Assembly (NCBI GenBank): GCA_963514005.1
Contig: OY740783.1
Location: forward strand, 133,424,001 to 133,488,000
Source of the DNA: Raja brachyura
Lineage: Eukaryota
Reading direction: 5' to 3'
DNA: 64,000 nt
In this document: one piece after another, positions 14,374 to 57,626 of the stretch
Layout: each line of letters begins with the position of its first letter
Numbering within the stretch: position 1 is the first letter of the stretch
Translations under genes and position numbers: made by a program
The notes under the pieces: model-generated
What the model was told of the DNA's origin: nothing
The model's database searches: none
Seen by the model: the letters and a program-made list of their open reading frames with translations, nothing else

Positions 14374-14434
14374 ATGTGCTCTCTCTGGGTGTGTCTCTGC
14401 ACCGTCCTGCTCTCCGTCTCAGTCCACGGGTACA
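14374..14434 (+). CDS. Gene A signal-peptide exon
   Basis: MCSLWVCLCTVLLSVSVHGY plus phase-1 donor A|gtaggt. Conserved in copy 2. Confidence 0.75.
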
Positions 14435-15515
14435 GTAGGTGTTTTGTTGACCATGTTATCTCCTCCTTGTCTCGTCATATCTCCCAATGTACCGGTTCGC
14501 ACTCTGTCCGCGCTCCAGCAGTTTGTACTTTGGCTGAGATCGATCAATGGGTGTGGTGGGGCTGGTGGGGAGTGAGGCGATATTGTCCATACCTAAGTGT
14601 CCTTCAGAAAGTTGTGGCGAGGCGCCCTGGTGACCCACCGAGCACTTGGTGAAGATGGTGAAAATACGTATGGAGACCGCCATTCATGAGACTCTCGATC
14701 AGCAAGAGAGGAAAATGTGACAGAGAGGAGGCGGGGATGTGGAGAGATAATTAACCGCAGAGCAGCCGCGACGTGTGTTATTATTTTCCGCAGGTGTGAG
14801 CTGGAGGGGCCGACTAGTATGCAGCTCGGTTGAGGTCGGGACGAGATCTAATGGAGGGATTTTGCGCACATGAATGTTGTTTCCATCGGTTGTGGCGCCG
14901 GGGGCGGGATAGGGGGGCAGGAGCGAGGGGGGTGGGGAGGGTGGGGTAGGGTAGACGGATAGATTTAATCGACGGTATGTGAAAGTAAGGAATATTCAGG
15001 GCTGTGTGTTGAGAATATGGATAAGAAGTCCGACTGGCTGGATTGATTTTCCATGAAGTCGGTATAGAACCGATGGGCCGAATGACAATCTCCACTTTGT
15101 ATCCATTATGTGACAGCAAGGGAATCCCAATAATCCATCTCCGGCTCCAGTCCTACAAAATGTCCAAACATTTCCTCTGCCCAGAAAGTAAATCAGCAAC
15201 ATTATAAAAACCAACTGACCCGGGGAGCAGACGTGAATCACACACCCATGAACAGTTGATTATATCCCAGCTTGTAACCCACTCCCCGTGTTGATGTATC
15301 TGTCCCACAGACATCTGAAGACATCGCGGGGCAGTGTGGATTTGGAACTCCACACCTGTACCNNNNNNNNNNNNNNNNNNNNNNNNNNNNNNNNNNNNNN
15401 NNNNNNNNNNNNNNNNNNNNNNNNNNNNNNNNNNNNNNNNNNNNNNNNNNNNNNNNNNNNNNNNNNNNNNNNNNNNNNNNNNNNNNNNNNNNNNNNNNNN
15501 NNNNNNNNNNNNNNN

Positions 15516-15892
15516 GACCAGGCGTTGGACAATATACGGTGCGGATGGGGTGTCTGCCGTGGAGGGGGCCTCCGCTGTGTTGCCGTGTACATTCACCCAC
15601 CCACGCACTGATCGCATCCTCACCGGCTCCGTGCTCTGGCACGAGGTTTCATCACAACCTCCCAGCCTTGTGTTTAAATGCACATGTCTCGGTCCCGGCC
15701 GCTCCCGGTGCGTTGAAGTGACACAGGAGGCTGGAGGAGGTCGGTTCAAATTAGTGGGGAAGCTCAGAGAGGGTGATGCCTCGATAATGGTGGAGCGACT
15801 GAGACTGGAGGACAGTGATAAGTACCGGTGCGGCCTGGAGCTCAGTGTTGGGTATTTTCAATCTCAGATTCCAACGCAGCTGACTGTGGAAG
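15516..15892 (+). CDS. Gene A V-set Ig domain 1, Siglec-15-like (acceptor hidden in gap 15363-15515)
   Basis: WTIYGADGVSAVEGASAVLPCTFTHP...W...VFKC...C...GRFKLVG...ERLRLEDSDKYRCGLE...LTVE G|gtgaga; open frame, phase 1. Confidence 0.9.
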
Positions 15893-17038
15893 GTGAGAAC
15901 AAAGTTCCGAGACTGTCGCTGCCCCAGAGCTCACGGACCGCGGGTTCCCCCGGTACAATGCTGATCAATACATGTTGATGGTTCAATTCAATGATTCAAT
16001 TATACTGTATTCTCACGCGTACATAGGTACTGCGAAATATTTTGTTTTGCAGACAAGCGTGAAAAATCATGTAGCAGACCTCACCTTGACAACACACAAG
16101 TGTCGCCATATTTTGGCGCCGAGAGTTGCAAAGATTCACTGCAGTTCTCTCTACTGCCTGTCGCCGCTCGTGATATCGCCCCCACCTCCCTCTCACTGTC
16201 ATTCTCGGCTGCCCACCTCGCCCCCCGACGGCCATCTTCACTCTCCGACGACCCTCCGCACTATCAGACGACCCTCCTCACTCTCCGACGGCCCACCTTC
16301 CTCTCGGCGGTTGCTCCCGGGTCCATCTTCGTTTTTGCGGCGCGGATCCTGTCGTTAGGTCCGCGGAAGGCGAGCCGGTCCTAAAGCAGGGCCAAGCCGG
16401 AGAACACGTGCAGCCGCACTGTTGGGCGAGAACAATCGCCTCGTGGGGTCGGGTGGGGTGGGGGTTGGTGGCTGAAGGGCCGGGGTTCCTGCTCCTGAAT
16501 CAGCTCCAGTTGATCCGTCTGGAGAGTGCGCTCCTAGAGTGGACGAGACGCCGGCGCTGGTCGACAGTGAAATACAGGTGGATGTGTAAACCGAGAAATA
16601 GGAAGATGCTGATCACCTTGTTGAAATTGTTCTCCAATTATCAATGGAAACAGAGGTGCCCAGTAGTAAAGGAGGTGTTGGGCCCCAATCCCCTGTCGGC
16701 GGGTCTCCCTCTCTGTGTGGAATTCACCGCTTCAAACAATGAATATACCCAATGGAGAACAGTGTTGGGATCCGGGGAGGCGCGGGTTCGCTGTCGCTCA
16801 CTCTCTCGCTCTCAGAGCAGCGAGGAAGAGCCGCGCTGTCAGCGGCGACCAGTGACCCCTGATCCGGAGCCACCCTTTGAACGCGTCCTGTCCCTTGCGC
16901 CCTCTGACCCACCTTCCCTGGGACCGTCACTATCAGCTGCACACTGAGCACCGCCTTCACCCACTCCCACAGGGAGAGGTCGGTACAAGACCATTCACCC
17001 ACAGAACTGATACATTCCGGTGTCTATCCTTCCCTCAG

Positions 17039-17452
17039 CTCCCGGCGGGAATGTCTCCGTGGTGACTGGGACTGTGGGAGGTTCGGCCACGTTACCCTGT
17101 GTGTATCGGCAATCCCAGTATCACCGCAGCGCCCTCAGGGTGACATGGATGAGGAAGGATCCCTACGGACACATCGTCACGTTCAGACCTCAAGCTGAAG
17201 GATCCTGGGCGGCGGAGAACGGAGCAATTCGGTTCGTGCTGGTCGGGGACCCAAAGCTGGGAAGCGCCTCAACCAGGATAAGGCAGCTGAGTGTGGACGA
17301 CTGTCACGGCTACCTGTGTCTGGTGGAGTTCAGCGAACCGGAAAACTACGATCCCATAAAGGACGTCGACTACAAGTTCAGGAGCAGTGTGCACCCGCCG
17401 TACACCCATCAGTACCAGTGTGAGGTCCAGCTCCGGATGCGGGTCACACGCG
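17039..17452 (+). CDS. Gene A V-set Ig domain 2 with long FG loop
   Basis: cag|...GGSATLPCVY...VTWMRKDP...RFVLVGD...QLSVDDCHGYLCLVEF...RVTR G|gtaagg; 414 nt, phase 1-1, open. Confidence 0.9.
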
Positions 17453-18764: not shown

Positions 18765-18863
18765 TCACACAGGGTTACATGATTCTGATCCTGTGGATCG
18801 CTCTTGGATTGAAAACCCATTTCTTTTAGTGATGTGTGTTATCTTCTACCGTGACAAACTCAG
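18765..18863 (+). pseudogene. Gene A transmembrane exon with Lys and a 1-nt deletion
   Basis: cag|VTQGYMILILWIALGLKT[fs]FLLVMCVIFYRDKL AG|gtaagt; 99 nt versus 100 nt in gene C. As written it stops after THFF. Confidence 0.85.
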
Positions 18864-19617: not shown

Positions 19618-19795
19618 CAAGCGTGGAGACCGATCCATCCTAGGAAGCTGAGCAGTGTTCAGACTGCAATATAACCTGCCTCGCTATGCAGTCCGCCGAT
19701 CATACCTGCTTTTGCGGTCCGGCTGATTTGTCGACCTATGGTTCTCAATCATATTAATTCTCCGACTGGCTTTAATATTTATGTGATATAATAAA
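19618..19795 (+). other. Gene A probable last exon (short tail, 3' UTR, AATAAA at 19790)
   Basis: The acceptor aattactgaggc...ggtcttcttctgtccgcag| is homologous to the gene C acceptor at 37067. Early stop in either plausible phase. Confidence 0.55.
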
Positions 19796-28377: not shown

Positions 28378-28432
28378 ATGTTCCGGGTTTGTCTCCCCGC
28401 CGTCTTGATCTCCGTCTCAGTCCACGGTTATA
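28378..28432 (+). CDS. Gene B signal-peptide exon
   Basis: MFRVCLPAVLISVSVHGY plus phase-1 donor A|gttggt. Confidence 0.65.
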
Positions 28433-29370
28433 GTTGGTGTTGTTGTTGACCTTGCTATGTTCTCCTTGTCTCGTCATATATCGCAATGTACCGGTTAGCA
28501 CTCTGTGCGCGCTCCAGCAGTTTGTACTTTGGATGAGATCTATCAATGGACGAGGTGGGACGGGTGGGGATGGAGGTGATATTGTCCATACCTAAGTGTC
28601 CTTCGGAAGGTGGTTATGAGGCGCCCTGGTGACCCACCGAGCACTTGGTGAAGGTTATCTGGCGAAGGCTAAGATGGAGGAAAATACGTATGGAGATCGC
28701 CATTCATAAAACGGAGTGAGACTCTCGACGAGGGGAAAATGTGACAGAGGAGGCAGGGATATGGAGAGAGAATTAACAGCACAGCAGCCGCGATGTTATA
28801 CACCAGTGGTGCGAGCTGGTGGGGGGGAGGGGGGGGGGGGGGGGGCTTAAGGAGACGGGAAGATTTAACCGACGGTATGCGACAGTAAGGAATTAGCATG
28901 GCTGTGTGTTGAGAATATAGAGAAGAAGTTCGACTGGCTGGATTCATGTTACATGGAGTCAGTATAGAGCCGATGGGCCGAATGGCCGTCTCCACTGTGC
29001 ATCTATTATGTGACACCAAGGGAATCCCAATAATCCATCTCCGTCCCCGGTCCTGCAAAATGTCCAAACATTTCCCCTGCCCCGAAAGTAAATCAGCAAC
29101 ATTATCAAAACCTACTGACCAGGGGAGCAGACGCGAATCACACACCCATTAACAGATCATTAACCCGGGGACAGTGTGCATTTGGAACACCACACCTGTA
29201 CTNNNNNNNNNNNNNNNNNNNNNNNNNNNNNNNNNNNNNNNNNNNNNNNNNNNNNNNNNNNNNNNNNNNNNNNNNNNNNNNNNNNNNNNNNNNNNNNNNN
29301 NNNNNNNNNNNNNNNNNNNNNNNNNNNNNNNNNNNNNNNNNNNNNNNNNNNNNNNNNNNNNNNNNNNNNN

Positions 29371-30242
29371 TGGTTGGACAATATCCGGAGTCTGCCGTGG
29401 ATGGGGCCTCCGCTGTGTTGCCGTGTACATTCAACCACCCACCTGATCGCATCCTCACCGGCTCCGTGTTGTGGCACTTGTTGCAACCAGGGACTGCCAG
29501 CCTCGTGTTTAAATGCACATATGCCGGTCCCGGCCGCCCCCGATGCGTTGAAGTGACACACGTTTAATCTTGCTACTATATCCCAGCCTGGATTGGGAAC
29601 TCCACACCTGTACTCGTTCCAATATTAACCTCTCCCACCCCCCTCTCTCTCCCTCTCTCTCTCACTCTCTCTCCCTCTCTCGCTCTCTCGCTCTCTCTCA
29701 CTCTCTCTCCCTCTCTGCCTCACCCCCCATATCACCCCTCCCCTCTCTCTCTCTCTCCCCCTCTCCCTCTCTTTCCCCAGACATTAAATCAGCAACATTA
29801 TAAAAACCAACTGACCAGGGGAAAAGACGCGAATTACACACCCATGAACAGTTGATTATATCCCAGCCTGTAACCCACTCCCCGTGTTGATGTATCTGTC
29901 CCACAGACATCTGAAGACATCGCTTGTCACAACACCCCGGGGATAGTGTGGATTTAGAACACTACACCTGTACTCGTTCCAATATTAACCTCCTCTTCAG
30001 GTGTCTTCAGAGCCTCCCAGCCTTGTGTTTAAATGCACATATGCCGGTCCCCGCCACTCCCGATGCGTTGAAGTGACACAGGAGGCCGGAGGAGGTCGAT
30101 TCAAATTGGTGGGGAACCTCAGAGAGGCAGATGCCTCGATAATGGTGGAGCGACTGAGATTGGAGGACAGTGATAAGTACCGGTGCGGCTTGGAGCTCAG
30201 TGTTGGGAATGTTCAATCTGTGATTCCAACTGACTGTGGAAG
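29371..30242 (+). pseudogene. Gene B V1 exon, split, partly duplicated and frameshifted
   Basis: The 5' half (29371-29559) is frameshifted. It is followed by re-duplicated upstream intron and (CT)n, then the 3' half (30001-30242) with a 4-nt deletion before the donor. Confidence 0.85.
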
Positions 30243-31175: not shown

Positions 31176-31600
31176 GTCCCAGTGGGTGTGTCTCAGTGGT
31201 GACTGGGACAGCGGGGGCTTCGGCCACGTTACCATGTGTGTATCCACAATCCCGGCATTACCCTAGCGCCCTCACAGTCACATGGATGAGGAAGGATCCC
31301 TGCCGACACATCGTCACGTTCAGACCTCAAGCTGATGGATGCTGGGCTGCGGAGAACGGAGCAACTCGGTTCGAGCTGGTCGGGGACCCAGAACGTGGAA
31401 ACGCCTCAACCAGGATTAATCAGCTAAGTGTGGAGGACTGTCACGGCTACCTGTGTCTGGTGGAGTTCAGCAAACCGGAAAACTACGATCCGAGATATGA
31501 CGTCGACGTAAATTTCAGGAGCAGTGAGGTAAATTTCAGGAGCAGTGAGGTAAATTTCAGTACCAACGTGAGGTCCTACTCCGGCTGCGGGTCACACTCG
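31176..31600 (+). CDS. Gene B V2 exon (G strand frameshifted, no stop before the donor)
   Basis: GASATLPCVY...WMRKDP...GYLCLVEF; 425 nt, so it enters in phase 1 and leaves in phase 0. A 21-bp tandem repeat lies in the FG loop. Confidence 0.75.
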
Positions 31601-32918: not shown

Positions 32919-33414
32919 CTCCCACTCTCTCCTCAGTCACACTCTCACCTCAGCTCCCACTCTCCTCAGCTCCCACTCTCTCCTCAGCTCCCACTCTCTC
33001 CTCAGCTCCCACTCTCTCCTCAGCTCCCACTCTCTCCTCAGTCACACTCTCACCTCAGCTCCCACTCTCACCTCAGCTCCCACTCTCTCCTCAGTCACAC
33101 TCTCACCTCAGTCACACTCTCACCTCAGCTCCCACTCTCTCCTCAGCTCCCACTCTCACCTCAGCTCCCACTCTCTCCTCAGTCACACTCTCACCTCAGC
33201 TCCCACTCTCTCCTCAGCTCCCACTCTCTCCTCAGCTCCCACTCTCACCTCAGTAACACTCTCACCTCAGCTCCCACTCTCTCCTCAGCTCCCACTCTCT
33301 CCTCAGCTCCCACTCTCTCCTCAGCTCCCACTCTCACCTCAGCTCCCACTCTCTCCTCAGCTCCCACTCTCTCCTCAGCTCCCACTCTCTCCTCAGCTCC
33401 CACTCTCTCCTCAG
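32919..33414 (+). repeat. 28-unit 16-18 bp minisatellite derived from the TM-exon splice acceptor
   Basis: Units ctcccactct(c/ca)..cctcag and tcacactctcacctcag. The single-copy counterpart in gene A is ctctctcctcag|tcacac. Confidence 0.95.
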
Positions 33415-33490
33415 TCTTGTGGATCCCTCTTGGATTGATAATCCTTATTATTTTAGTGATATGTTTTATCTTCTACCGTGACAAAGTCAG
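33415..33490 (+). CDS. Gene B transmembrane segment, no Lys
   Basis: VLWIPLGLIILIILVICFIFYRDKV AG|gtatgt. The AAA (Lys) codon of genes A and C is ATA (Ile) here. Confidence 0.85.
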
Positions 33491-33564: not shown

Positions 33565-33950
33565 TTCCCAGGCCCAAAGAATGAGGACATCCTGGATGTC
33601 CTGGCGTGGAATACCACGTGTGGGTACAAATACGGCATAGACAGAGGAATTGGGAGTTGTGGATAGAGGATTTGCAGGAAGCAGGGTGTGAAGTCTCGAT
33701 AGTTGTTGGAGCCTGTACGTTTATTGTAGACATCAGTCGATGGTCTATCTCCTGTGATGGAGACAGTGAGATCAAGAAAGGGTAGGGAGGTGCCAATGAT
33801 TGTTCCAGTGAATCTCAGTGCAGGATTGAAATTGGGGGTGAAGTTAGGGAAGTCTATGAGTTCTGCATGGGTGCAGGAGGTAAAACCGATGCCATTGTCA
33901 ATGTAACAGAAATAGAGTTCGGCGATAGGGCCAGTGTACATTTGGAACAA
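33565..33950 (-). mobile_element. Penelope-like RT fragment
   Basis: ORF 33528..33983: CYIDNGIG (decayed YIDD) and LPFLDLTVSITGD...DVYNK. Confidence 0.8.
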
Positions 33951-34611
33951 GCGTAATGTTAGCTGTGTGTTTACAATAAACACATTTATAGCTTTTGTTT
34001 CAGGTACAGTATCTGGGCAAATTCTTAGGCAATTGTCATCAAACTCTTCTATAAATGGAAACCTTGTTGCACCTTGTCCATGCTGACCAAATTAGCATTC
34101 TGGGCTTGTCATATCTGCCCACATTTGGCCAATAATCCTCTAACCCCTTCAGGTCCATATCCATATATATGTCCAAATGTTGTTTGAAAGTGATAATTGT
34201 ATCAACTTCTACACTTTCCTCTGGCAGCTCAATCTGGATACAGATTATCCCGGTGAGTGAAATTGTTGCCCATCAGGAGTGACACAGTGGTGCAGCAGTT
34301 GAGTTGCTGAACAATGCCAGAGACCCGAGTTCGATCCTAACTACGGCTGCTCTCTGTATGGAGTTTTACGTTGTACTCTGCGACCGCGTGGGGTTTTCTC
34401 TGGGTGCTCTGGTGTCCTCCGACATTCCAAAGACGTACAGGTTTGTAACTTGTCCCTTGTATGTTAGATAGAACTAGTGTTTGAGTGATCTTTGTTCGAT
34501 GTGGACTCAGTGGGCCGTAAGGCCTGCTTCCACGCTGTATCTGTAAACTAAAGTAAAATATCCCCCTTAAATCTCTCCCCTCTCACCTTAAGCCTATGTC
34601 CACTAGTTTTT

Positions 34612-34833
34612 TGTGTTAAAGAAGGAACTGCAGATGCTGGAGAATCGAGGGTTACGCAAAAAGCTGGAGAAACTCAGCGGGTGCAGCAGCATCTAAGGAG
34701 TGAAGGAGATAGGCGACGTTTCGGGTCGAGACCCTTCTTCCTGCGAAAGGTCTCGACCCGAAACGTCGCCTATCTCCTTCGCTCCTTAGATGCTGCTGCA
34801 CCCGCTGAGTTTCTCCAGCTTTTTGTGTAACCC
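34612..34833. mobile_element. Fold-back element of two inverted Penelope-type pLTR pieces with a 13-bp target-site duplication
   Basis: Near-perfect inverted repeat at 34647-34835; tccactagttttt at both 34599-34611 and 34834-34846. Confidence 0.8.
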
Positions 34834-37067: not shown

Positions 37068-37656
37068 CTGTGGACAGAACAAGACCAGTGAAAATTACTG
37101 AGCTTCAGTAATTCCACAGGAAAAGCTTTTTTCCCCCATTGATCGGCAGCATCACAGAATGGTTACAACGTAGGCGGTGACCACTCAGCAGGTCAGGCAG
37201 CATCTGTGGAGGGAAATGGACGGATGGCGTTCCCGTGTGTCAAGGAACTGCAGATACTGGTTTATCAATGAAAGACACCTGGTTATTACGGGTGTCGGGG
37301 TTATGGAGAGAAGGCAGGAGAATGGGGTTGAGAGGGGAAGATAGATCATCCATGATTCAATGGTGGCATTGACTTGACAGGTCGAATGGCCTAATTCTGC
37401 TTCTTGAACTCATGAACATGAAGTTATGACACAAAGTTCTGGAGTAACTCAGTGGGTCAGGTAGCATATCTGGAGAACACTGGAGCACCTCTGGTAGATC
37501 TTCCCCTTCGCTCTACCTGTTGTACTTGAGCGTCACGTGATTAAAATTATGTATCACATTATCTGATCTGATTGGATTGCATGCAAAGCAAAGCTTGCCA
37601 CTGTACGTCAACAGCTGTGTCAACAATCAGTCTAATCCTAACCCTCACTCGCTCAC

Positions 37657-37706
37657 CTCCTTCTGGACTTGCAGCGTTCCATTCACTGAATACCATCACA
37701 TCTGAG
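37657..37706 (-). CDS. Gene C candidate 50-nt cytoplasmic exon
   Basis: tag|...SDVMVFSEWNAASPEG G|gtgagc. Phase 2 to 1 fits between the TM and last exons. Confidence 0.35.
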
Positions 37707-39073
37707 CTATTCAGGCAAAGAATGTGAAGGTCCATGGGGAGAGACGGAGCAGAGCATGGGAGACACAAGGAACTGCAGATGCTAGAATTGTGATAAAAAC
37801 GCAGAGTGCTGGAGGAATTGATTAGGTCAAGCAGCGACTGTGGAGGGAATGGACAGGGAAGATTTTGGGTCAGGACCCTCCTTCACCCCCTGAATTTCTT
37901 TTCCCCTTTAGGTTCAGGTTTATTACTGTCACATGAACTGAGGTGCAGAAAAAAGGTTTGTTTTTCATGCAAAACCATTAGACCAGATTATGCTACACAT
38001 AAAAACAATCAATTCAAACAAGTACGATAGGTAGAGCAAATGGGAAGATGCAGAGTGCAGAATATAGTTCTCAGCGTTGTAGCGCACCAGTTCCACAGAC
38101 AATGTCCAATGTCCGCAATGGACACAAAAGGTTTAGAGGGATATGGGTCAAACGCTGACAAATGGGATTATATCAGATGGGGCCAAAGGGCCTGTTTCCA
38201 TGCAGTGCATAATAGACTAATTGGATGCTGGAATGGATAGACAAGGCTTGACAGAAAAAAAACTGAGAAAACCTGGGAAGAAAGGATAATGACAGACTGT
38301 GCAGANNNNNNNNNNNNNNNNNNNNNNNNNNNNNNNNNNNNNNNNNNNNNNNNNNNNNNNNNNNNNNNNNNNNNNNNNNNNNNNNNNNNNNNNNNNNNNN
38401 NNNNNNNNNNNNNNNNNNNNNNNNNNNNNNNNNNNNNNNNNNNNNNNNNNNNNNNNNNNNNNNNNNNNNNNNNNNNNNNNNNNNNNNNNNNNNNNNNNNN
38501 NNNNNNNNNNNNNNNNNNNNNNNNNNNNNNNNNNNNNNNNNNNNNNNNNNNNNNNNNNNNNNNNNNNNNNNNNNNNNNNNNNNNNNNNNNNNNNNNNNNN
38601 NNNNNNNNNNNNNNNNNNNNNNNNNNNNNNNNNNNNNNNNNNNNNNNNNNNNNNNNNNNNNNNNNNNNNNNNNNNNNNNNNNNNNNNNNNNNNNNNNNNN
38701 NNNNNNNNNNNNNNNNNNNNNNNNNNNNNNNNNNNNNNTTGAATGAATAAAATCAACTTCTCAGATGTCTGAAAGGGAAAAGCATCGTGATAACAGAGGG
38801 AGAAATGAATGGTAATCGTGCAGGAGACAGGGTGGGGCTGGGTGCAGTCAATGAAGATCCGTGTGTTTGCTGTAAATATCTATGGATAGTTTGTCTCCTG
38901 GGATAGAGACAGAGAGATTGAGAGAGGAGAGGGGACACTGAGAACACTCAGTTGGTCAGGTAGCATCTACAGGGAGAGAAAAGGAATCAATGTTTCAGCG
39001 GAATCACCGGAAGAAGACTATGAATCACATTGCAGACATTGGAAGGCAAGTATCTCGCAGCAATATTACATAC

Positions 39074-39173
39074 CTGGTTTTGTCCCTGATTAAAATGAAG
39101 CCCATCACCAAAAGGACAAGGCTTTTCACTCCAAGTGGAATACATAGTATCAGAGTGTAGGAAAACTGTGGGG
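39074..39173 (-). CDS. Gene C transmembrane exon with Lys (intact)
   Basis: ctctctcttcag|APQFSYTLILCIPLGVKSLVLLVMGFILIRDKT AG|gtatgt; 100 nt, phase 1-2. Aligns codon for codon with the TM exons of A and B. Confidence 0.88.
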
Positions 39174-44561: not shown

Positions 44562-44909
44562 CTGTTGCAACTTGCAGTTGGATCTCAAACTGGAACAGAT
44601 GGAAGGTCGAGGTCACGATCTGCACCAGACACAGGTAGCCGTGACTGTCCTCCACACTCAGCTGCTTTATCCTGGTTGAGGCGTTTCCCTTCCCTGGGTC
44701 CCCAACCAGCTCGAACCGAGTTGCACCGTTCTCCGCCACCCAGGATCCATCAGTTTGGAGTCTGAACGTGACGATGTGTCGGATGGGATCCTTCCTCATC
44801 CATGTTACCGTGCGAAGCATGTGGCTCGGCAGAAGCGGTGAGAACACACAGGGTAATGTAGCCGAAGCCCCCTCAGTCCCAGTCACCGTTGAGACATTCC
44901 CTCTGGGAG
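44562..44909 (-). CDS. Gene C V-set Ig domain 2 (short FG loop)
   Basis: cag|APRGNVSTVTGTEGASATLPCVF...WMRKDP...EDSHGYLCLVQ...QLQVAT G|gtaaga; 348 nt, open. Confidence 0.92.
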
Positions 44910-46058: not shown

Positions 46059-46131
46059 CTCCATCCAGTACAGGTCCAGTGCCATCAAATGCTCATCATA
46101 TGTTAACACACTCATTTTTGGGATCACTCTC

Positions 46132-49100
46132 ACAATAGACAAGTGACAATAGACAATAGGTGCAGGAGTAGGCCATTCGGCCCTCAGAGCCAGCACCACC
46201 ATTCAATGTGATCATGGCTGATCATCCACAATTAGTAGCCCGTTCCTGCCTTCTCCCCATATCCCCTGACTCCGCTATTTTTAATAGCCCAATCAAGCTC
46301 TCCCTCTCGAGAATCCAGAGAACCGACATCCACCCCCCTCTGAGGCAGAGAATTCCACAGACTCACAAGTGTGAAAAAGTTCTAAATGCCTTACCCCTTA
46401 ATATTAAACTGTGACCCCTGGTTCTGGACTCCCTCAACATCGGGAACATGTTTCCTGCCTCTTGCGTTTCCAAACCCTTAATAATATCATGTGTTTCAAT
46501 AGAATCCCCTCTCATCCTTCTAAATTCCAGAATATACAAGCCCAGCCATTCCATTCTCTCAGCATATGACAGTTCCGCCATCCCAGGAATTAACCTTGTG
46601 AACCTACGCCTCATTCCCTCAATAGCAAGAATGTTGTTCCTCAAATTTGGAGACCAAAACTGCACACAATGCTCCAGGTGTGGTCTCACTATGGCCCTGT
46701 ACAACTGCAGAAGGACCTCTTTGCTCCTATACTCAATTCCTCGTGTTATGAAGGCCAACATGCCATCAGCTTTCTTCACTACCTGCTGTACCTGCATGCT
46801 TACTTTTATGGACTAATGAACAAGGAACCCCAGATCTTGTTGTACTCCCCCTTTATCCAACCTGACGCCATTTAGTTAATAATCTGCCTTACATTAGTCA
46901 TGCATCTGCCCACTCACCCAACATGTCCAAGTCACCCTGCACGCCCATGGCATCCTCATCACAGTTCATACTGCCACCCAGCTTTGTGTCATCTGCAAAT
47001 TTTTTACTGTTAATTTGAATCCCTTCATCTAAATCATTGATGTATATTGTAATAGCAAGATTAAACGAGAACTTACCAGTTTGAAGTTTGATCTTTATTT
47101 TATGAAGCGTTACGATGAGCGATTAGGTGAAGAAGCCCGCCAGTCCACATGCGCATCAATCTTCAAAGCAGCGGTGTGAAATCACAAATAACGGTAGTTG
47201 AAGTGACATAGTAAGATTATAGAAGATTATAACTACCAGATTACCTTTATGATACGAGGGTTGGGAGTGGAGGGTACGTAATCGCGCATCGTAACTCCTC
47301 ATAAAATAAAGATCAAACTTCAAACTGGTAAGTTCTCATTAAATCTTAACATTTTACTTCTGAGTCACGTGAGTGATTCCGTGAAGATTTCAAAGCTCTG
47401 TGATTTCATGCCGTGGATACGAGTCCATGCGACACACTCAGTTGACCCAGGATGAATAAATAATAAATAATGCATTCAAACATGATACAGACTTAAACAT
47501 GTTGATGCTTTAATTTGCAAAAAAGTAAAAAAAACAATAGCGACCCCTCTCTTCCAGGGGGAAGCTATAAAACAGAATTAAAAATGGAGTGGGCAAATAC
47601 CCCCGGAGTGACAAGTGGTTTATTATAAAACCTTTGAAGTCTCAGTTCATTTGACCATCCTGCGGACACGAGGATTTGGTCGAGAGGGACGTCCAGTGCC
47701 CTCGCTGCTGACGTTGATGCCGCCCTGGTGGAGTGAGATTTTAAAACGTCAGTGTCCACTCCGGCACAAGCCAGAACCTGTTTCAGCCACCTTGAAATGG
47801 TCTGTACCGACACCTTCTTATGAGGCTTTGTGTGACTGATGAATATCGTTAATTCGGAGCCTCTGGTGCTCTTGGTGACCCTGAGATACAGCTGCAAGTG
47901 CGCAACTACACATAAGCGAAGGTCTATGGGGTATGCCATAAAAATAGGTTTAAGCCCTGACATCCCTGGCCTGCTCTGCTTAAGTAAATCATAAACACAA
48001 AATGTTATGTTATTTATAGATAAAACCATGTTGTCAAGTTGCAGCTTCTGCAACGTCTGGACGTATTGCGCTGAAACCAGCACCATGAGCATGACCACCT
48101 TGAAAGTGAGTCTGGGCAAAGACAGGGATGTAGCTGGAGCCCATTGGCGAAGCAGCAGGAGAACTACGCTCAAATCCCAAATCTCCGTGTACCTGGGCCT
48201 GGGGGATTACAGTTACAAATACTCTTCATGAACCGGGATATTAAAGGGTGAGACCCAATAGAGTGTTGTCCCGATCTCTGCCACAGGTAGGATGATAAGG
48301 CGCTCCTGGCACTGTTGATGGCACTATAGCTCAGTCGCATATCAAAATATAGCTTGGAAAGAAATTCCAACACATCTGGTCTGCTTGCCGTGTGATATGA
48401 TATTTTCGACTGCAAGCAGAACACCTCCCATTTTTTGATATGAGAAATGTATTTTTTTTGTACTATCCCTCCAAGCAGCAGTAATCATATCCACCGTATG
48501 ACCTGATAGTCTGAGGAACGGTCTCCTCAGAATCTGCAAATCAATAGATTAATACGGTCATGTAGTGGTTAGTTCTCCCCACAGGGTGAACCAGCATGTT
48601 GCTGCATTTGGGGATAGCCATAAAAGGCTGCGTTATTAGTCTCAGAACGAGTGGGAACCATGGCTGTGTAGGCCAGTCGGGAACTACCAAAACGCCTGAG
48701 GCGGAGTCCTGCTTGATCTTAAGCAAGCACCGACTAATGAGGCAAATTGGGGGAAATGCATATAAAAACATTCCACCCCAGTGTAGCGAGAATGCATCTA
48801 CCGCTACTGCCCCTGGGTCTGGTTCCCATGAAACATACTTTGGTAGCTGGTGATTTACTCTGGATGCACGCAAATCAATATCTGGTATGCCATACCGAGC
48901 GCCAATATAATTAAAAATTTCATGATTCAACATCCATTCTGTGTTGTCATTGAATTTTCGTGACCTGGTGTCCGCCACCATGTTAAATCTATCTGGTAAA
49001 TAGATAGCTGAAATCCAGTGCCAAATAAGGTTAGCCAATTTATCACATGTTCCCGTCTTGATTCCACCCATGTGATTAACGTATGCTACTGCTGTGGTGT

Positions 49101-52100
49101 TGTCAATCTGAAGCTGAACATGTAAGTCATGCATACTAGTACAATAGGCCTTTAAGCCATAGAGTGCTCCCAACAACTATAAATAGTTAATACCATGTAA
49201 TTGATGAATTAATACCTCATGCATATTCCATCTGCCACCGCAGCTAGAGATGGTATCAGTAGCTCCCCATCCTAGAGTACTAACATCAGTTTGTAAAATA
49301 AATGAAGGTTTATCAATCAGAATTTTACTGGAGCAGTGCCAAATATTCGCTATCCACCACTGTAACTCTGCAATGGCTTCAGCTGGTAACCGCATGGGTC
49401 TATTGAAGTGACCTACATGTCTTTTGAGTGCCTGCTCCTTTGCACGTTGTAAACTTTGTTAATGTAAAGGCCCAAACTGTGCAGCTGGAAAAGCAGCCAC
49501 TAATTTGCCAATTATACTAGCCACCAGCCGAAATAAAAGGTTGTTGCGCATCAACGAGATTGTTACAAGCTTATATTAGCTCGCATCTCTTGCCCATTGG
49601 CAGAGTCACAGACATCTGAGTTAAATTAACGGTGAATCCCAAATAATCAATAACTCTAGATGGTATCAATTTGGATTTAACTGGATGGATGAGAAAGCAC
49701 AACCTCTCAAACACGAGTTTGGTAGCTGAAACAGATAATTCAGCTGATTTCTGAGTATGGCCTATGATTAGGACATCATCCAAATAGTCCATTACAATAT
49801 GATTCTGAGTCCGGTGTAGGCCCAACACCGGTTTTAACAATTTTGAAAATAATCTAGAAGCCGAAGTTAACCCATTAGGCAATGCTTTAAACTGCCATAG
49901 TTGCCTCATCCAGCTAAACTTCAAATATCTCCGGTGATTGTAATGAATGGATACTGAATAGTATGCATCTTTAAGATCTATGCATGCCATATAATATCCT
50001 TTGGAAACCAGTTGTTTAGCAGTAAAAAAAGTTTCCATTATGAAACATTTATACTGCACATAGGAGTTAAGTCGGGTTAGATCTAGAATGATTCGACACC
50101 CACCATCCGTCTTTTGTCTAGGAAATATATTAGACACAAATTGGTGAGATTGATGAAATTACGTCTCAATTACCCCTTTTTTAGATAACGTTTCAAATTC
50201 AGCTTACATCCAAAGACTCTTGTTGTGAAAAAAACAATGTCCGGCTTGGTGTATGCTGTGTAGGTGGACGTAAATTGAAAAGGAATTCTATTCAGAACCC
50301 TTGTATACTGTGCAGTATAAACGAATCTGATGTTATGCAACACCAATCATTGAAAAACAATTGTAATCTCCCACCAACTTGTAACTGATCCATATATGAT
50401 ATGTTTTGAAAAGAACCAGATCCACCTACCTCCATGGTTCCCGGTGGAAATTTCTGCCCCCGAATTTTGGAGGGGAAGAATGTTGGAATGCACCAATTGC
50501 GCATGTTTGGCAAGGGCTGGCTTGGTCCTTGGCCTGAACCAGCTTCAGCGAACCGTATGTAGGGGTGCTGCCGATGCAGTGGAATTTTGCTAGTCGGCTG
50601 GGCTTTTATGAGGCCGACCGTTTTTGCCTCGTCGTCCAGCTCTCTGACCCGTTTTGATAGGTCTTCACCGAACAGCAGATTCAGCAGTCGCACATTGCTG
50701 GATTTGCACAGTGCCGCAAACCTGGGGTTCAGAGTAGGACCGATGCCACTCTTTCTGAGACAGTTTATTTCAAAATGTGCATTGCACATTAGCGCCAGAG
50801 CATCCTGCTGCACCTCAGACAGGGGCCCCCCATCCACCGATCTAGCGAAAGCTGCAATGCCTGAAGCGAGCAGCTTCAGTATCTTCTGGAGCCTCATTTC
50901 CTGGGCTCTGATACCTACACCCATGTGACCCCAGATAGTGTGGTTCACAGATGGCACTTTGATCGAGGCACAATTGGCGGGTGTTTCGTATTTTTGGGAA
51001 GTTTCTTCCATTGTGATGCCGTGCAGCTGGTGTGAGGCCATGTAATTTATAGCAATGGCCAGGTCATCATCCAGCGGTTCCCCAGTTCCGGTCGGGATAG
51101 CAAATTTAGATGCCATGCTTGGCACCCCTGGTTCGCGCCCTTCTTCCCTTGAGGTATGCTCACCGGCTATACCCCCGACCTCGGAGTCAGAACAAATCTG
51201 ACCACGAATGCTCTCCTCCTCCAAGAGGGAGACATTATGGAGCCCTTTAACAGGTGCCGCTGCCACGGGCCACGAGGAGACCCGCGGATATAAAGCTCCT
51301 CTTGCTGGAGCATATTGTGATGGAGCATCCTCTCCATCAGAAGATCCATTCTGGACAAACGTCTGAAGACGCTATCCATTGTGGAAGGGGAACCGTCCTG
51401 GCCCAACTCGTCCGAGTCAACGGGCCTTACCGACTTCTTAGTGTTTTTCCGTCCCACCAGAGTAGCCACGGTGCTTTCAATCGGCACCAAGTCGGAAGCC
51501 ACTGGCCGTGCTGCCAGTGACGCTGAAGGCGAGATAGATGACCGCCCGCTACCCGCACTCCCGCGGTCTTCCATAGCTCTCCCGGCGGCCCGCCTCGACC
51601 TCCCCACAGTCATTTTCTCCATGGTTCGAACTTGCTTCCTGCAACAAGACTTACCTGAGGGTTTTTTAAACTTATCGCTGGTGCAGCTACACACCTGCCA
51701 GTCCGTCGTTGTGCCATGCGTCAGACGTAATGACGCGCATGTGGACTGGCGGGCTTCTTCACGGAATCACTCACATGACTCCTAAGTAAAATTAGTTGTG
51801 GCCCCCGTACCGAGCCTTGCGATGCACCATTAGTCATTGCCTCCATTCTGAAAGGGACCCGTTAATCCCTACTCTTTGTTTCCTGTCTGCAAACCAAATT
51901 TCTATCCATGTCAGCACACCACCCCCGATACCATGTGCCCTAATTTTGCCCACTAGTCTCCTATGTGGAACCTAGTTAAATGCCTTCTGAAAGTCCAAGT
52001 ACAGTACATCCACTGGCTCTCCCTTGTCTATTTTCCTAGTTACATCCTCAAAAAATGCCAGAAGATTAGTCAAGCATGATTTCCCCTTCGTAAATCCATG

Positions 52101-53945: not shown

Positions 53946-54449
53946 CACCGCTCACAATTTGCCCTGACCTTACTCTCTTATCTCTTCTCAAACTTTCCCT
54001 CCCATTAATTCGGGAGTCTTTTGTAAATTTTCCTGTGGTCACTTCCCCTTTAACTCCATCTTTATACTCCCAGTAAACCTCCACTGGATATGTCGGTGGA
54101 CATCTTAATGGGCAACGATGAGAGGAGGGAGCCTTGACATACAGGAAATGAGAGAACTCCAGGTGTAGTGCTAGGCAGACGTCTCCCCGCAGGTCAATGC
54201 AGGGCTCAACACCCATGGACATGGCCATGATGAGCTTTGAAGATCTCACACGGGTGGTGAAGATCAGAGAAGGTCTCATTGAATTTCACCTTTCAGTCAT
54301 TGGCACCACAGTCTCCTCCCCTCTCCTCCCCTCCCCTCCCCTCCCCTACCCTACCCTTCCCACCCTCCCTAGGCACCTCCATTCATTGACTTCAGAAGTC
54401 ATCTCCCCGCAAATCCCCATCACAGTTGGTATCCAGCGTTACGATGCAT

Positions 54450-55245
54450 CACTTGCACACACACATATGCACGGGCGCCTGAACACATGCATAAACATAC
54501 AACATGCACACATACACATGTACAAACTCATAGACAGACACGTGCTATCACACATGTACAAACACGTGCACGCACACAGGCACACACATGCCCACATTCA
54601 CGTACATACACACACATACACACACACAGACCCACACACCCACACACACACATGCTCACACACACACACACACAGACCCACAGACACGCACACAGCCATA
54701 CACACACCCCCATGCCTGCACAACATAGGGTTGCAGATGCACACGTACATTCAAAGATATTTGCACATAGAAATGAGACGCACAATCACTGACATACACA
54801 CAAATGAGACACATACACAGTGACACATACACACTGCCATATATAGACACACACGCAAATGAGATGTGCACACATATAGGATTATGGACAGACACACAAA
54901 TATACACCAGCAAGTGACACACATACATACATACATAAAGACACTCGCATGCACAAGACATACAAATGGACACTCATGCACGTACTCACACATTCATACA
55001 AAAACGTACACAATGACCCAATAACACACACAAACAAAGAGACATTGACGCTTGCATGCATTCACGCACCCTACAGAATCACACACACGTAGATATACAT
55101 GCCCACATGCACACACCCATACACAAACAGACAAACACGCATAGAGATTTACGCGCACGTACTCACACACATGCACTCGCGCAGACACACATGCAGCCAC
55201 AAATGCAGCACCAGACACACACAAATACACACACAAACACACTTT
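54450..55245. repeat. Degenerate (CA)n-rich tract
   Basis: Composition. It explains the HT/CV-rich ORFs. Confidence 0.9.
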
Positions 55246-56068
55246 GTTACCTGCACGTTGTCTGTCGGTGTAGCGCCACATTCTGCACTGTTCATAATTT
55301 TCTCTTTTGCACTTCCTGATATACTCAACGTCTCCACATTTCAACATAAGGCCGGCACAGTAGCGGCAGTACCAATGCCAGAGACCCGGGTCTATCCCGG
55401 TTTTCCTTGAGTGCTCTGGTTTCCTCCCACATTACAAAGACGTGCAAGTTTGTACGTTAATTGACTTCTGTAAATTGCCCCTAATGACTAGGATGCGAAA
55501 CTGGAATCGCATAGAACTGGTGATCGCTGGTTGGCGGGGACTCGGTGGACCAAAGGGCCTGATTCCATGCTGTATCTAAACTAAACTGAATCTAGAATAC
55601 ATTTGGACAGGTACATGGATACGAAAGGTTTAGAGGAATATGGGCTAAAGACGGGCAGGTAGCACTAGTGTAGAGGAGGCATCTTGGTCATCATGGGAAA
55701 GTGCCTGTTTCCACACTGAATGACTATGATATAATTTCAACATAACGGGTGTCAGAGGTTATGGGGAGAAGGCAGGAGAATGGGGTTAGAAGGGTTAATA
55801 GATCAGCCATGATTGAATGGCGGAACAGACTTGATGAACCGAATGGCTTAATTCTACTATTCCTTACGACCTTCTGACCTTAGCATGCAAAACAAAGATT
55901 TTCACTCCATCTCGGTAAACTTAATAATAATGCACCAATCAACCAATTAATACCCTATTAAATCAAAGTGATGGAGAAACTCAGTGGGTCAGGCGGCATC
56001 TGTGAAGGGAATGGACAGTCTGTCAAATCCCTCCACCGATGCTGCCTGAATTGCTGGGTTCCTCCAAT

Positions 56069-56205
56069 AGGGTCTCGACCCGAAACGTCGCCTATCTCCT
56101 TCGCTCCACCAGTCTGAAGAAGGGTCTCGACCCGAAACGTCGCCTATCTCCTTCGCTCCTTAGATGCTGCTGCACCCGCTGAGTTTCTCCAGCTTTTTGT
56201 GTAAT
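56069..56205 (+). ncRNA. Tandem minimal hammerhead-ribozyme-like motifs in a Penelope-type pLTR repeat
   Basis: CUGAAGA (56114-56120), A, stem GGGU-CUCG-ACCC, GAAAC, GUC (56139-56141). A 5'-truncated copy sits directly upstream. Confidence 0.55.
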
Positions 56206-57245
56206 CCTCCAATACTTTGTTTTGCTTGATTATTTTGTTTTTCCAACCAATTGTCTTGGTTGGGATGTATTGGTTATCAAAAGCGCCAGTTACTAGTTTA
56301 GTTTACTGTCAGGTGTATTGGGATTCATCACATAATTTATCACAGTATTTGGGAAAAGCTCCACCCAAGACCGCAAGAAATAGCAGAGAGTTGTGAACAT
56401 AACCCAGCCCTTCACACAAAACAACCTCCCTTCCATTTATCCTGTGTACACTTTATGCAAAGCCAGCAGCATAATCAAGGATGACTCTCACCCCAGTCAC
56501 CCCCTCATCTACCCTCTCCCACAAGGCAAGAAATACAGAAGTGTGAAAATGCACACCTTCAGAATCGGGGACAGTTTCTACCAGCTGTTATCAGGCAACT
56601 GAATGGTCCTCTAACCAGCGGGAATGCGGTTCTGACCTCCCATCCACCTCACTGGAGACCCTTTGAGCTATCTTGAATGGTACTTTATCAGACTTCAATT
56701 TTATATGTTTGCACTAAACGAGCATATTTGCATCCTTTATTCTTTATCTGTGTACTGTGTACAGCTGGATTGTATTTATGTATAACATTTTCTTTGACTG
56801 AACAGCATGCAAACAAATGCTTTTCACTGTACCTCGGTGCATTTAGAGCAAATTACAGAATCCAGTTCACCAACAAACATGTGTCTTTCAAATGTGAGAG
56901 GAAACTGGAGCACCCGGAGAAAACCCACAGGGTCACAGGGATAACGTCCAAACTCTGTACAGACAGCATCAGTAGTCAGTCGAACCCGGCTCACTGGCGC
57001 AGTGAAGCAGCAATTCTACTGCTATTATGTTGAAATGCCGAGAGTTATGGTATACGAGCTGGCGCAAAAAAGAAAATTATAAGAGCGCAGTAGAATGTGC
57101 TGCAGCGACAGAGAAAGTGTAGGTAAAATAAATTGCAAAGGCTGCAACAAGGTGGATTGGGAGAGCGATCCCGGGTCTCTGCCGCTGAGAGGCAGTGGCT
57201 CTACCACTGCCCCACCGTCATTGATACAATTAGAGCCTTGCTCAC

Positions 57246-57626
57246 CTCTCACAGTCAGGCGAATGACCTTTTGTAATAGAGGAGGTCCATCGATGTCCTT
57301 CACATTGCACTGATATAGAGCATTATCCTCCTGCCCCAGTCGCTCCACCATTATTGAGGCATCCCTCCGACTGAGATTCCCGATGAACCTAAACCGATCT
57401 CCTCCTGCCCCATGCCTCATTTCATCGCACCAGGAGTGGAAGGGAGCAGTGAACAGACACTTAATAATGGCATTGAAACCCCGCAGGTCACCTTTGAACC
57501 AGCTCAGTTCGAGCTTGATGGTGTGATCAGTGGCCGTGTAGTTGAACGGACACGGCAAAACAGCCGATCCTCCTTCCACGGCAGACACTTCATCGGCAGT
57601 TGGAAAATGCCAAGTATGGGTGCCTG
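57246..57626 (-). CDS. Gene C V-set Ig domain 1, Siglec-15-like
   Basis: ttctattccag|...WHFPTADEVSAVEGGSAVLPCPF...SWFKG...IKC...C...RFRFIGNLSRRDASIMVERLGQEDNALYQCNVK...LTVR G|gtgagc; 381 nt, open, NAGNAG acceptor. Confidence 0.92.

What the first reader, a model, noticed from the sequence alone, without database searches (positions are those of the whole stretch)
14374..57626. Cluster of Siglec-15-related V-V receptors with a TM lysine but no sialic-acid-binding arginine
Seen: three paralogues (A +, B +, C -) with V1 / V2 / TM exons, leaders found for A and B, and consistent splice phases. The TM exons are missing from the ORF track. Known: Siglec-15 has AVLPCTFTHP, an extra Cys pair after VFRC, the essential Arg in YFCRVE, one C2 domain, and TM LGFK that binds DAP12. 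Here V1 keeps AVLPC(T/P)F and FKC...C, and the TM reads LGLK or LGVK. The Arg position is Gly (YRCGLE in A and B) or Asn (YQCNVK in C), and domain 2 is another V domain related to V1. Inference: an expanded, diversifying family of activating DAP12/DAP10-coupled receptors that binds something other than sialic acid. I know of no description of this architecture but cannot search for one.
Basis: partly seen in the sequence, partly recalled or inferred. Interest (0 to 1): 0.85.

Follow-up and report, generated by a model that had tools for sequence, protein, structure and literature searches.

The report
Siglec-15-like tandem-V receptor gene cluster
The window holds three copies of a skate/shark immune-receptor family related to Siglec-15, with two V domains and an adaptor-type membrane lysine. 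Only one copy looks usable, and gene predictions for this family already exist in many shark and ray genomes, though I found no paper on it.

Summary
The three paralogues and their motifs are real. V1 is closest to Siglec-15: phmmer against PDB gives human Siglec-15 at E 2e-14, with the next hit, pIgR, at 1e-5. In a 1.84-billion-protein library, every hit I looked up was either an elasmobranch or lungfish relative or a Siglec-15(-like) protein of bony vertebrates.

The copies are not equivalent:
- **C** has intact V1, V2 and TM(Lys) exons. Its little-skate orthologue has the same architecture.
- **A** has all five exons, but a 1-nt deletion in the TM exon puts a stop right after LGLK.
- **B** is broken: V1 is split, there are two frameshifts, and the TM reads LGLI, not LGLK.

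The 5' ends of V1 in A and B abut assembly gaps, so the leader-to-V1 splice phase cannot be verified.

The family spans skates, rays and sharks in RefSeq, partly named "sialic acid-binding Ig-like lectin 15". It has activating-type members (TM Lys, short tail) and inhibitory-type members (ITIM). About 75% of members keep the sialic-acid arginine, so its loss here is a lineage variant, not a family trait.

No RNA evidence could be obtained, and no paper on the family was found. This scan has noted the same family on other DNA of this genome. Verdict: a real, moderately interesting new variant of a known kind. The "non-sialic ligand" idea is untested.

The parts
14374..14434 (+). Gene A leader exon (MCSLWVCLCTVLLSVSVHGY + 1 nt). 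The likely phase-1 donor is GTAGGT at 14435. Alternative GT donors at 14430 and 14439 would be phase 2.
   Evidence: 95% identical to the leader of Amblyraja P0209. The same donor position is conserved in B.
15517..15892 (+). Gene A V1 exon, visible part only. Its 5' end abuts the gap 15363-15515. Donor G|GTGAG at 15893, phase 1. Contains AVLPCTFTHP, FKC...C and YRCGLE (Gly at the Siglec Arg position).
   Evidence: V-set, 9.6e-9; Siglec-15, 2e-14; 74% to skate V1.
17039..17452 (+). Gene A V2 exon (414 nt, phase 1 to phase 1). A V-set domain with a long F-G insertion.
   Evidence: V-set, 5.9e-9; 72-78% to skate V2.
18765..18863 (+). Gene A TM exon, 99 nt. Reads TQGYMILILWIALGLKTHFF then a stop at 18827-18829. 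A 1-nt deletion relative to B, C and the skate orthologues puts LLVMCVIFYRDKL out of frame.
   Evidence: the X1 contig is identical, and the X8 contig has +C after 18822.
19618..19651 (+). Gene A tail exon: (S)KRGDRSILGS then stop. Acceptor cgcag at 19617, phase 2.
   Evidence: Matches the tail SKREDGSIAGS of Rhinoraja P0003.
28378..28432 (+). Gene B leader exon (MFRVCLPAVLISVSVHGY + 1 nt).
29371..29560 (+). Gene B V1 5' fragment, directly after the gap 29203-29370. Contains AVLPCTFNHP.
29999..30242 (+). Gene B V1 3' fragment. It overlaps the 5' fragment by about 82 nt of homologous sequence. A 5-nt deletion before the donor shifts the exon end to phase 2. Contains YRCGLE.
31176..31600 (+). 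Gene B V2 exon, 425 nt (net +11 nt against A). Contains a perfect 21-nt tandem repeat at 31508-31560. The 3' end of the exon is therefore out of frame.
33415..33490 (+). Gene B TM exon remnant (76 nt). Reads LWIPLGLIILIILVICFIFYRDKV, with Ile in place of the Lys. It is preceded by an 18-nt minisatellite (32919-33414) made of acceptor-like units.
57246..57626 (-). Gene C V1 exon (381 nt, phase 1 to phase 1; alternative acceptor 3 nt downstream). Contains AVLPCPF, IKC...WC and YQCNVK (Asn at the Arg position).
   Evidence: V-set, 1.8e-11; 73% to Leucoraja P0253.
44562..44909 (-). Gene C V2 exon (348 nt, phase 1 to phase 1).
   Evidence: V-set, 2.9e-14; 79% to P0253.
39074..39173 (-). Gene C TM exon (100 nt, phase 1 to phase 2). 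Reads (A)PQFSYTLILCIPLGVKSLVLLVMGFILIRDKT, intact with a central Lys.
   Evidence: (82% to P0253).
38306..38738 (.). Assembly gap at the distance downstream of C's TM exon where the tail exon is expected. In A the TM-to-tail intron is about 750 nt. C's tail exon was not found.

Best explanation
This is a tandem cluster of three members of a multigene family found across elasmobranchs. The family encodes type I membrane receptors derived from the same V-domain stock as Siglec-15. The exon plan is leader, V1, V2, TM, short tail.

**Proposed working (inferred, not shown).** V1 is the membrane-distal, more variable, ligand-binding domain. V2 is a conserved spacer. The central Lys of the IPLG(L/V)K helix would pair with the acidic TM residue of an ITAM adaptor of the DAP12/DAP10/FcR-gamma type, so ligand binding gives an activating signal. 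Sister genes in the family with a neutral TM and ITIM tails would give the opposing signal.

**State of the three copies.**
- Gene C is the only copy whose visible exons are all intact. It is the orthologue of a little-skate model with the same plan.
- Gene A was disabled, or is truncated, by a 1-nt deletion in the TM exon.
- Gene B is a decayed or misassembled copy that has also lost the Lys.

**Ligand.** All three lack the strand-F Arg that Siglec-15 needs for sialic acid, so canonical sialic-acid binding is unlikely for them. Most of the family keeps this Arg.
For: **Shown here.**
- Exon anatomy and motifs.
- All complete V exons are V-set.
- V1 against PDB: human Siglec-15 at 2e-14, next pIgR at 1e-5. 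V2's best hit is also the Siglec-15 V domain, at 2.6e-7.
- A family profile against PDB gives Siglec-15 7e-25, pIgR 5e-19, CD33 3e-10. The alignment covers WSM...AVLPCTFTHP...VERL...YxCRVE.
- Library search: 198 hits. The 30 I looked up by name are elasmobranch or lungfish relatives, or Siglec-15(-like) proteins of mammals, birds, turtle, coelacanth, gar, teleosts and newt.
- 90 RefSeq-type models from about 18 elasmobranch species.
- Closest relatives are skates, at 72-79% per exon. C matches one Leucoraja protein across V1, V2 and TM.
- The V1 and V2 clades each have 98% SH-aLRT support, and each spans sharks and batoids.
- The family holds TM-Lys/short-tail forms and neutral-TM/ITIM forms.
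- The AlphaFold model of the C orthologue shows two confident V-type domains plus a TM helix (pLDDT 84). Its best structural matches are tandem-V receptors such as JAML and pIgR.

**From the literature.** Siglec-15's TM Lys binds DAP10/12 and R143 is essential for sialic-acid binding (PMC7226832).
Against: - No RNA evidence for any copy. The runs found are DNA-like contigs.
- C's leader and tail exons were not located. Its V1-V2 intron is 12 kb and holds retroelement ORFs.
- A carries a premature stop, and B is broken.
- Adaptor pairing is inferred from a motif only. No adaptor sequence was available to test.
- The tree lacks non-Siglec outgroups and its deep nodes are weak. A separate V-C2 'Siglec-15' gene exists in skates (P0099) and groups with coelacanth Siglec-15. 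So the family is Siglec-15-like, not clearly the orthologue.
Confidence: 0.7

Rival explanations
1. One reading: the Arg-less copies are functional activating receptors that have moved to a non-sialic-acid ligand, as part of a diversifying family.
For: - The Asn of C is shared with its Leucoraja orthologue and a second related protein (P0253, P0024). So this Arg-less lineage has been kept with intact V1, V2 and TM across species.
- The Gly of A and B recurs in Rhinoraja, Narcine and Pristiophorus members.
- V1 is more variable than V2: mean pairwise identity 55.8% against 63.8%.
Against: - No binding data.
- Arg loss is also what relaxed constraint gives. Two of the three copies here are damaged.
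- Crude dN/dS never clearly exceeds 1.
- 71-77% of family members keep the Arg.
Confidence: 0.25
2. The whole local cluster is a decaying relic: all three copies, C included, are non-functional pseudogenes among transposable elements.
For: - A is frameshifted and B is multiply broken.
- C's leader and tail were not found.
- Retroelement ORFs sit in C's 12-kb intron.
- No RNA holder was found.
Against: - C's three visible exons are open, with correct phases and canonical splice sites. They are 73-82% identical to one complete Leucoraja model.
- The missing tail exon is expected inside an assembly gap.
- A has all five exons and only one lesion.
Confidence: 0.2
3. The family is not Siglec-15-derived. 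It would belong instead to the pIgR/CD300/TREM-like (MDIR-type) or JAML-type V-set receptors, and the shared motifs would be convergent.
For: - pIgR is the second-best sequence hit.
- JAML and pIgR are the best whole-model structural matches.
- NCBI names some members pIgR-like, JAML-like or HAVCR1-like.
Against: - Siglec-15 beats pIgR by 9 orders of magnitude for V1 alone, and scores 89.9 bits on one domain with the family profile.
- The signature runs over the whole domain, including the extra Cys pair, and the TM has the same LGxK context.
- No protein named MDIR or from Raja eglanteria appeared among the relatives.
Confidence: 0.07

Closest known systems
Siglec-15 (human structure 7ZOZ; conserved from fish to mammals)
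   Same: - V1 has the same signature (WSM/WTI...AVLPCTFTHP, an extra Cys pair after VF(K/R)C, GRF(K/R)L(V/L)G, VERL, YxCxxE).
- The TM has a central Lys in an LGxK context.
- The tail is short, with no signalling motif.
   Different: - The second domain is a V-set duplicate, not C2.
- The essential Arg is Gly (A, B) or Asn (C).
- It is multicopy with inhibitory sister genes, whereas Siglec-15 is single-copy.
- A separate V-C2 gene annotated Siglec-15 exists in skates, and it has no TM Lys.
CD33-related Siglecs of mammals (paired Siglec-5/14 and -11/16; Arg-mutated Siglec-12). This comparison is from my own knowledge.
   Same: A rapidly evolving, clustered family with ITIM-bearing and DAP12-type (charged TM) members, and with recurrent loss of the essential Arg in some members.
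   Different: The V domain is of a different lineage (CD33 only 1e-3 to 3e-10). CD33-related Siglecs have V followed by C2 domains, never V-V.
JAML (junctional adhesion molecule-like)
   Same: Tandem V-V ectodomain. It is the best Foldseek match of the two-domain model (E 1e-17).
   Different: Sequence similarity is far weaker than to Siglec-15 (2e-12 against 7e-25). JAML has no TM Lys, and it signals through its own tail (own knowledge).
Skate MDIRs and teleost NITRs (multigene activating/inhibitory Ig receptors of fishes). From my own knowledge; MDIRs are only mentioned in PMC3031540.
   Same: Multigene, modular Ig-domain receptors with charged-TM activating forms and ITIM inhibitory forms. 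MDIRs were described in a skate.
   Different: MDIR domains were reported as related to CD300, pIgR and TREM, not to Siglec-15. No MDIR-named protein appeared among the relatives.

Membership tests
Siglec-15 (orthologue group) | N-terminal V-set domain with the Siglec-15 sequence signature and the extra Cys pair | tested here: met
   best PDB hit by a wide margin. The alignment covers the whole domain, including both extra Cys.
Siglec-15 (orthologue group) | Essential strand-F Arg (human R143) for sialic-acid binding | tested here: not met
   Gly in A and B, Asn in C. Its role as the essential residue is from PMC7226832.
Siglec-15 (orthologue group) | Second extracellular domain of C2-set type | tested here: not met
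   Domain 2 is V-set. Its best PDB match is the V domain of Siglec-15. It is modelled as a V-type domain.
Siglec-15 (orthologue group) | Transmembrane Lys that couples to DAP12/DAP10 | tested here: met
   The Lys is present in C. It is present in A but followed by a frameshift stop. It is replaced by Ile in B. Actual adaptor binding is not testable here.
Siglec-15 (orthologue group) | Orthology (one-to-one descent) with bony-vertebrate SIGLEC15 | tested here: inconclusive
   In the quick tree, a distinct skate V-C2 protein (P0099) sits with coelacanth Siglec-15, and V1 forms its own clade. Deep support is weak and there is no outgroup. Synteny was not examined.
Elasmobranch tandem-V Siglec-15-like receptors (RefSeq models such as XP_078252965.1 and XP_055488063.1, and the Leucoraja orthologue P0253) | Leader-V1-V2-TM(-tail) exon order, with V1 and V2 falling inside the family's V1 and V2 clades | tested here: met
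   (72-79% per exon to skate members). (both clades at 98% SH-aLRT).
Elasmobranch tandem-V Siglec-15-like receptors (RefSeq models such as XP_078252965.1 and XP_055488063.1, and the Leucoraja orthologue P0253) | Activating-type TM motif IPLG(L/V)K...RDK with a tail of 8-15 residues | tested here: met
   C. A: motif and tail exon are present but out of frame. B: the Lys is lost. Family pattern.
Paired activating/inhibitory receptor families | Closely related genes with ITIM tails and with a charged TM in the same family or cluster | tested here: met
   Met at family level. No ITIM exon lies inside this window. An inhibitory neighbour 14 kb upstream is reported only by an unchecked scan note (s1-880916).
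Skate MDIR family | Sequence membership | not tested
   No MDIR sequence was available. Only indirect evidence: no MDIR-named hit.

The most novel reading that the evidence does not exclude
Cartilaginous fishes carry a large multigene family of paired activating and inhibitory tandem-V receptors that grew out of the Siglec-15 lineage and that I could not find described in any paper. It would be their counterpart of the mammalian CD33-related Siglecs. In it the Lys-bearing 'Siglec-15-type' signalling module sits on V-V genes, while the V-C2 gene has a neutral TM. The sialic-acid Arg has been lost repeatedly, and at least one Arg-less lineage (gene C and its skate orthologue) has been maintained, implying a ligand shift.
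Probability: 0.35. Interest if true: 0.65.

Novelty: new variant of a known kind. Interest (0 to 1): 0.45.

Why it matters
Current reviews say fishes have only the four conserved Siglecs (Siglec-1, CD22, MAG, Siglec-15), and that rapidly evolving paired Siglecs are a tetrapod or mammalian feature (PMC7226832). An expanded, paired, Siglec-15-derived family across sharks, rays and skates would show something different. It would mean the oldest jawed vertebrates built their own fast-evolving lectin-type receptor system, with recurrent loss of the sugar-binding arginine. That gives a tractable case for asking how Siglec-type receptors change ligand.

For this window alone the value is smaller. It holds one apparently usable gene and two damaged copies of a family that is already present in public gene predictions.

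Tried and rejected
- **RNA support.** The one run search (kind 'any') returned no run on record as RNA. The four runs I laid are contig sets that cover introns as well, so they give no splice evidence. They did confirm A's TM letters and showed a frame-restoring +C in another organism.
- **The look-up of encoding contigs.** I wanted the Leucoraja locus, to find C's leader and tail by homology.
- **C's leader and tail.** Motif and ungapped BLOSUM scans of 57600-64000 and 33600-39060 found nothing convincing.
- **B's tail.** Not found.
- **MDIR identity.** No MDIR-named protein appeared among relatives of P0003 or P0013, and only one paper in the library mentions MDIRs. This is not a real test.
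- **Literature.** Seven searches for Siglec(-15) combined with shark, elasmobranch, cartilaginous-fish or skate terms, for MDIR, and for Siglec-15 evolution in fishes found no description of the family. A search for DAP12 in cartilaginous fish gave nothing useful.
- **Tree.** There are no non-Siglec outgroups among the retrievable sequences. 'V1 groups with Siglec-15' therefore rests on best-hit margins, not on a rooted tree.
- **Joined protein.** Every search used single exons by reference, and the structure model used the skate orthologue P0253.
- **Gaps.** The gaps were not filled.
- **B as a working gene.** I considered and rejected this. The V1-to-V2 phases (2 then 1) and the V2 exon length (425 nt) both break the frame.

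Full report
**What is in the sequence**

The window is eukaryotic DNA with four assembly gaps. Between 13.5 and 19 kb and between 27.5 and 33.6 kb lie two tandem copies about 85-91% identical, introns included. These are genes A and B on the + strand. A third, more divergent copy, gene C, lies on the - strand between 57.6 and 39.1 kb. Each has a V1, a V2 and a TM exon. The four complete V exons all pass Pfam V-set. V1 and V2 are about 30% identical to each other.

**Gene A**

- Leader: ATG at 14374, reading MCSLWVCLCTVLLSVSVHGY, 95% identical to a thorny-skate leader.
- V1: visible from 15517 to 15892.
- V2: 17039-17452.
- TM exon: 18765-18863.
- Tail exon: 19618-19651, encoding (S)KRGDRSILGS-stop.
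- The TM exon is 99 nt, against 100 nt in C. A single base is missing after the Lys codon, so it reads ...LGLKTHFF-stop. The rest of the helix (LLVMCVIFYRDKL) is in another frame.
- An independently assembled contig set from the same organism (X1) has exactly these letters. It may come from the same individual. A contig from a different organism (X8, 93% alike) has an extra C after 18822 that restores the frame.
- So the lesion is in the reads, not an assembler slip. It is a recent inactivation, a polymorphism, or gives a truncated anchor. The stop lies 34 nt before the last exon junction, so nonsense-mediated decay would probably not remove the mRNA (this is inference).

**Gene B**

- Its V1 is in two pieces, 29371-29560 and 29999-30242. 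They overlap by about 82 homologous bases and differ at a few positions. They are separated by low-complexity sequence and a second copy of upstream intron.
- This could be a real rearrangement or a haplotype or assembly duplication next to the gap at 29203-29370.
- Independently of that, a 5-nt deletion before the V1 donor makes V1 end in phase 2, while V2 starts in phase 1.
- V2 is 425 nt (net +11 nt, with a perfect 21-nt repeat at 31508-31560), so it ends out of phase.
- The 5' part of the TM exon is replaced by 28 copies of an 18-nt acceptor-like unit.
- The TM reads LGLI: the Lys codon AAA is ATA.
- As assembled, B cannot encode a V1-V2-TM protein.

**Gene C**

- V1 57246-57626, V2 44562-44909 and TM 39074-39173 are open. 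They have canonical AG/GT sites and phases 1-1, 1-1, 1-2.
- The TM reads (A)PQFSYTLILCIPLGVKSLVLLVMGFILIRDKT.
- All three exons match one little-skate protein (P0253, 289 aa) at 73%, 79% and 82%. That protein has the plan leader-V1-V2-TM-RRNRD and also has Asn at the Arg position. This ties the three exons into one gene despite the 12-kb V1-V2 intron, which holds retroelement ORFs.
- I found neither C's leader in the 6.4 kb upstream nor its tail exon.
- By analogy with A, whose TM-to-tail intron is about 750 nt, the tail is expected at about 38.3 kb. That is where the gap 38306-38738 begins.

**Gap test**

The gaps at 15363-15515 and 29203-29370 sit directly on the 5' ends of V1 in A and B. 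Skate orthologues have about five more residues (N-I-S-x-N/K) before the W-T-I that opens the visible part of A's V1. A phase-1 leader donor right after the Tyr codon is conserved in A and B. The AG six bases after the gap in A would be phase 2. The true acceptor is therefore probably inside the gap, and the claimed leader-to-V1 phase consistency cannot be verified. I did not fill or infer the gap letters.

**What it is related to**

- A's V1 against all PDB sequences gives human Siglec-15 at E 2e-14. The next hits are pIgR 1e-5, CAR 3.5e-5, TIM-3 1e-4, CD33 1e-3 and NKp30 0.03.
- The alignment puts A's Gly on Siglec-15's essential Arg and matches both extra cysteines.
- V2's best hit is also the V domain of Siglec-15, not its C2 domain, at 2.6e-7.
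- A 45-protein family profile raises Siglec-15 to 7e-25 (89.9 bits on V1 alone). pIgR scores 5e-19 summed over two domains, and CD33 3e-10.
- In a 1.84-billion-protein library, V1 has 198 hits at E <= 1e-3.
- I looked up 30 of them by name. They are elasmobranch proteins, a seven-V lungfish protein, or proteins named Siglec-15 or Siglec-15-like from mammals, birds, turtle, coelacanth, gar and teleosts, plus a newt 'Siglec-12'.

**The family**

- A search with a 318-aa Rhinoraja member found 90 models in about 18 species of skates, rays and sharks. Most are 'uncharacterized'. Many are named 'sialic acid-binding Ig-like lectin 15', and others sialoadhesin-like, JAML-like, HAVCR1-like or pIgR-like.
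- The closest relatives of the window's exons are skates, at 72-79%.
- In a quick maximum-likelihood tree, the V1 and V2 domains form separate clades. Each has 98% SH-aLRT support and contains both sharks and batoids, so the V-V duplication predates their split. C pairs with P0253, and A pairs with the Rhinoraja/Leucoraja group.
- Members fall into two types:
  - An activating type: TM ...IPLG(L/V)K..., then RDK or similar, with a tail of 8-15 residues.
  - An inhibitory type: neutral TM and a tail of about 100 residues with VIYAAV and CTYASI-like motifs.
  - V-only and multi-V forms also exist.
- Arg occupies the strand-F position in 48 of 62 members scanned by motif, and in 32 of 45 aligned V-V members. 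The others are His, Gly, Asn, Ser, Gln, Lys, Tyr or Leu. So the loss of Arg here is a recurrent variant, not a family trait. The Gly of A and B recurs in Rhinoraja, Narcine and Pristiophorus, and the Asn of C in Leucoraja.
- A related V-V-C2 subfamily extends to the chimaera.
- A separate V-C2 protein annotated Siglec-15 in skates (P0099) has a neutral TM and sits with coelacanth Siglec-15 in the tree.
- Orthology to SIGLEC15 is therefore unresolved. I call the family Siglec-15-like.

**Structure**

Instead I modelled the skate orthologue P0253 with the family alignment. The model has mean pLDDT 84 and pTM 0.74, with two confident V-type beta-sandwiches and a helix at 257-286. Foldseek's best matches are tandem-V ectodomains: JAML at 1e-17, then pIgR, CD226 and scFvs. 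This confirms the V-V architecture.

**Evolutionary rate**

- Across the family, V1 is more variable than V2: mean pairwise identity 55.8% against 63.8%.
- Crude Nei-Gojobori dN/dS is 0.36 for V1 (A against B), 0.58 for V2 (A against B) and 1.03 for V2 (A against C).
- The A-B V2 exon (83.8% identical) has diverged more than the flanking introns (87.6-91.3%).
- This fits a fast-evolving immune family, or relaxed constraint in B. It does not demonstrate positive selection.

**How it most likely works**

Shown here: the domain plan, the Siglec-15-type V1, and the Lys in a conserved TM motif. Inferred: a surface receptor whose TM Lys recruits an ITAM adaptor, as the Lys of Siglec-15 does with DAP10/12 (PMC7226832). 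ITIM-bearing sister genes would give the opposite signal. Without the Arg, canonical sialic-acid recognition is unlikely for these three copies. What they bind instead, if anything, is unknown.

**Expression and literature**

No RNA run was found. Seven literature searches found no description of this family. [quoted passage not shown] Subscription journals are not covered.

This scan has already noted the same family in at least seven other windows of this genome. One is an inhibitory-type gene 14 kb upstream of this window. Those notes are unchecked.

**Verdict**

There is one apparently usable gene, one frameshifted gene and one broken gene.
- The Siglec-15 relationship holds.
- The family is already present in public gene predictions, but I found no published study of it.
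- The non-sialic-ligand idea is untested.

Noticed in passing
window 32919-33414: An 18-nt minisatellite (28 copies, 91% matches, with a higher-order period of 71 nt). Its unit, CTCCCACTCTCTCCTCAG, is the polypyrimidine/AG acceptor of the TM exon. It replaces the 5' part of gene B's TM exon.
   Followed up: partly
window 31508-31560: A perfect 21-nt tandem repeat (2.5 copies) inside gene B's V2 exon. It replaces about 20 nt that encode VHPPYTH in gene A, and each unit contains an AG|GTAAAT donor-like site.
   Followed up: partly
window 47565-51694 (- strand): A run of long ORFs in gene C's V1-V2 intron, on the same strand as the gene. One (49571-50137) is a reverse transcriptase (RVT_1, 8e-14). 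This looks like a retroelement insertion.
   Followed up: partly
window 817-1581 (- strand): A LINE-type endonuclease ORF (Exo_endo_phos, 1e-10).
   Followed up: partly
window 18822 in run X8 (organism C): A contig from a different organism, 93% alike, carries one extra C that restores the reading frame of the TM exon. In that organism the orthologue or a close paralogue of gene A is therefore intact at this point.
   Followed up: no
proteins P0099 (Amblyraja) and P0072 (Latimeria), not in the window: The V-C2 proteins annotated Siglec-15 in a skate and the coelacanth have neutral TM helices, while the Lys-bearing LGxK helix sits on the V-V family. The signalling module and the domain plan of mammalian Siglec-15 are thus split between two gene types in skates.
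   Followed up: partly
proteins P0002 (lungfish, seven V domains), P0023 (gar, V-V), P0027 (newt, V-V with ITIM tail): Multi-V Siglec-15-like proteins also occur in bony vertebrates outside mammals, so tandem V is not restricted to cartilaginous fish.
   Followed up: no
window 4867-6192 and 54197-55410: Long dipeptide-like microsatellite tracts (PD/GL/GS-type reading frames around the gap 5786-5941, and HT/CV-type CA-rich repeats). I did not examine it.
   Followed up: no
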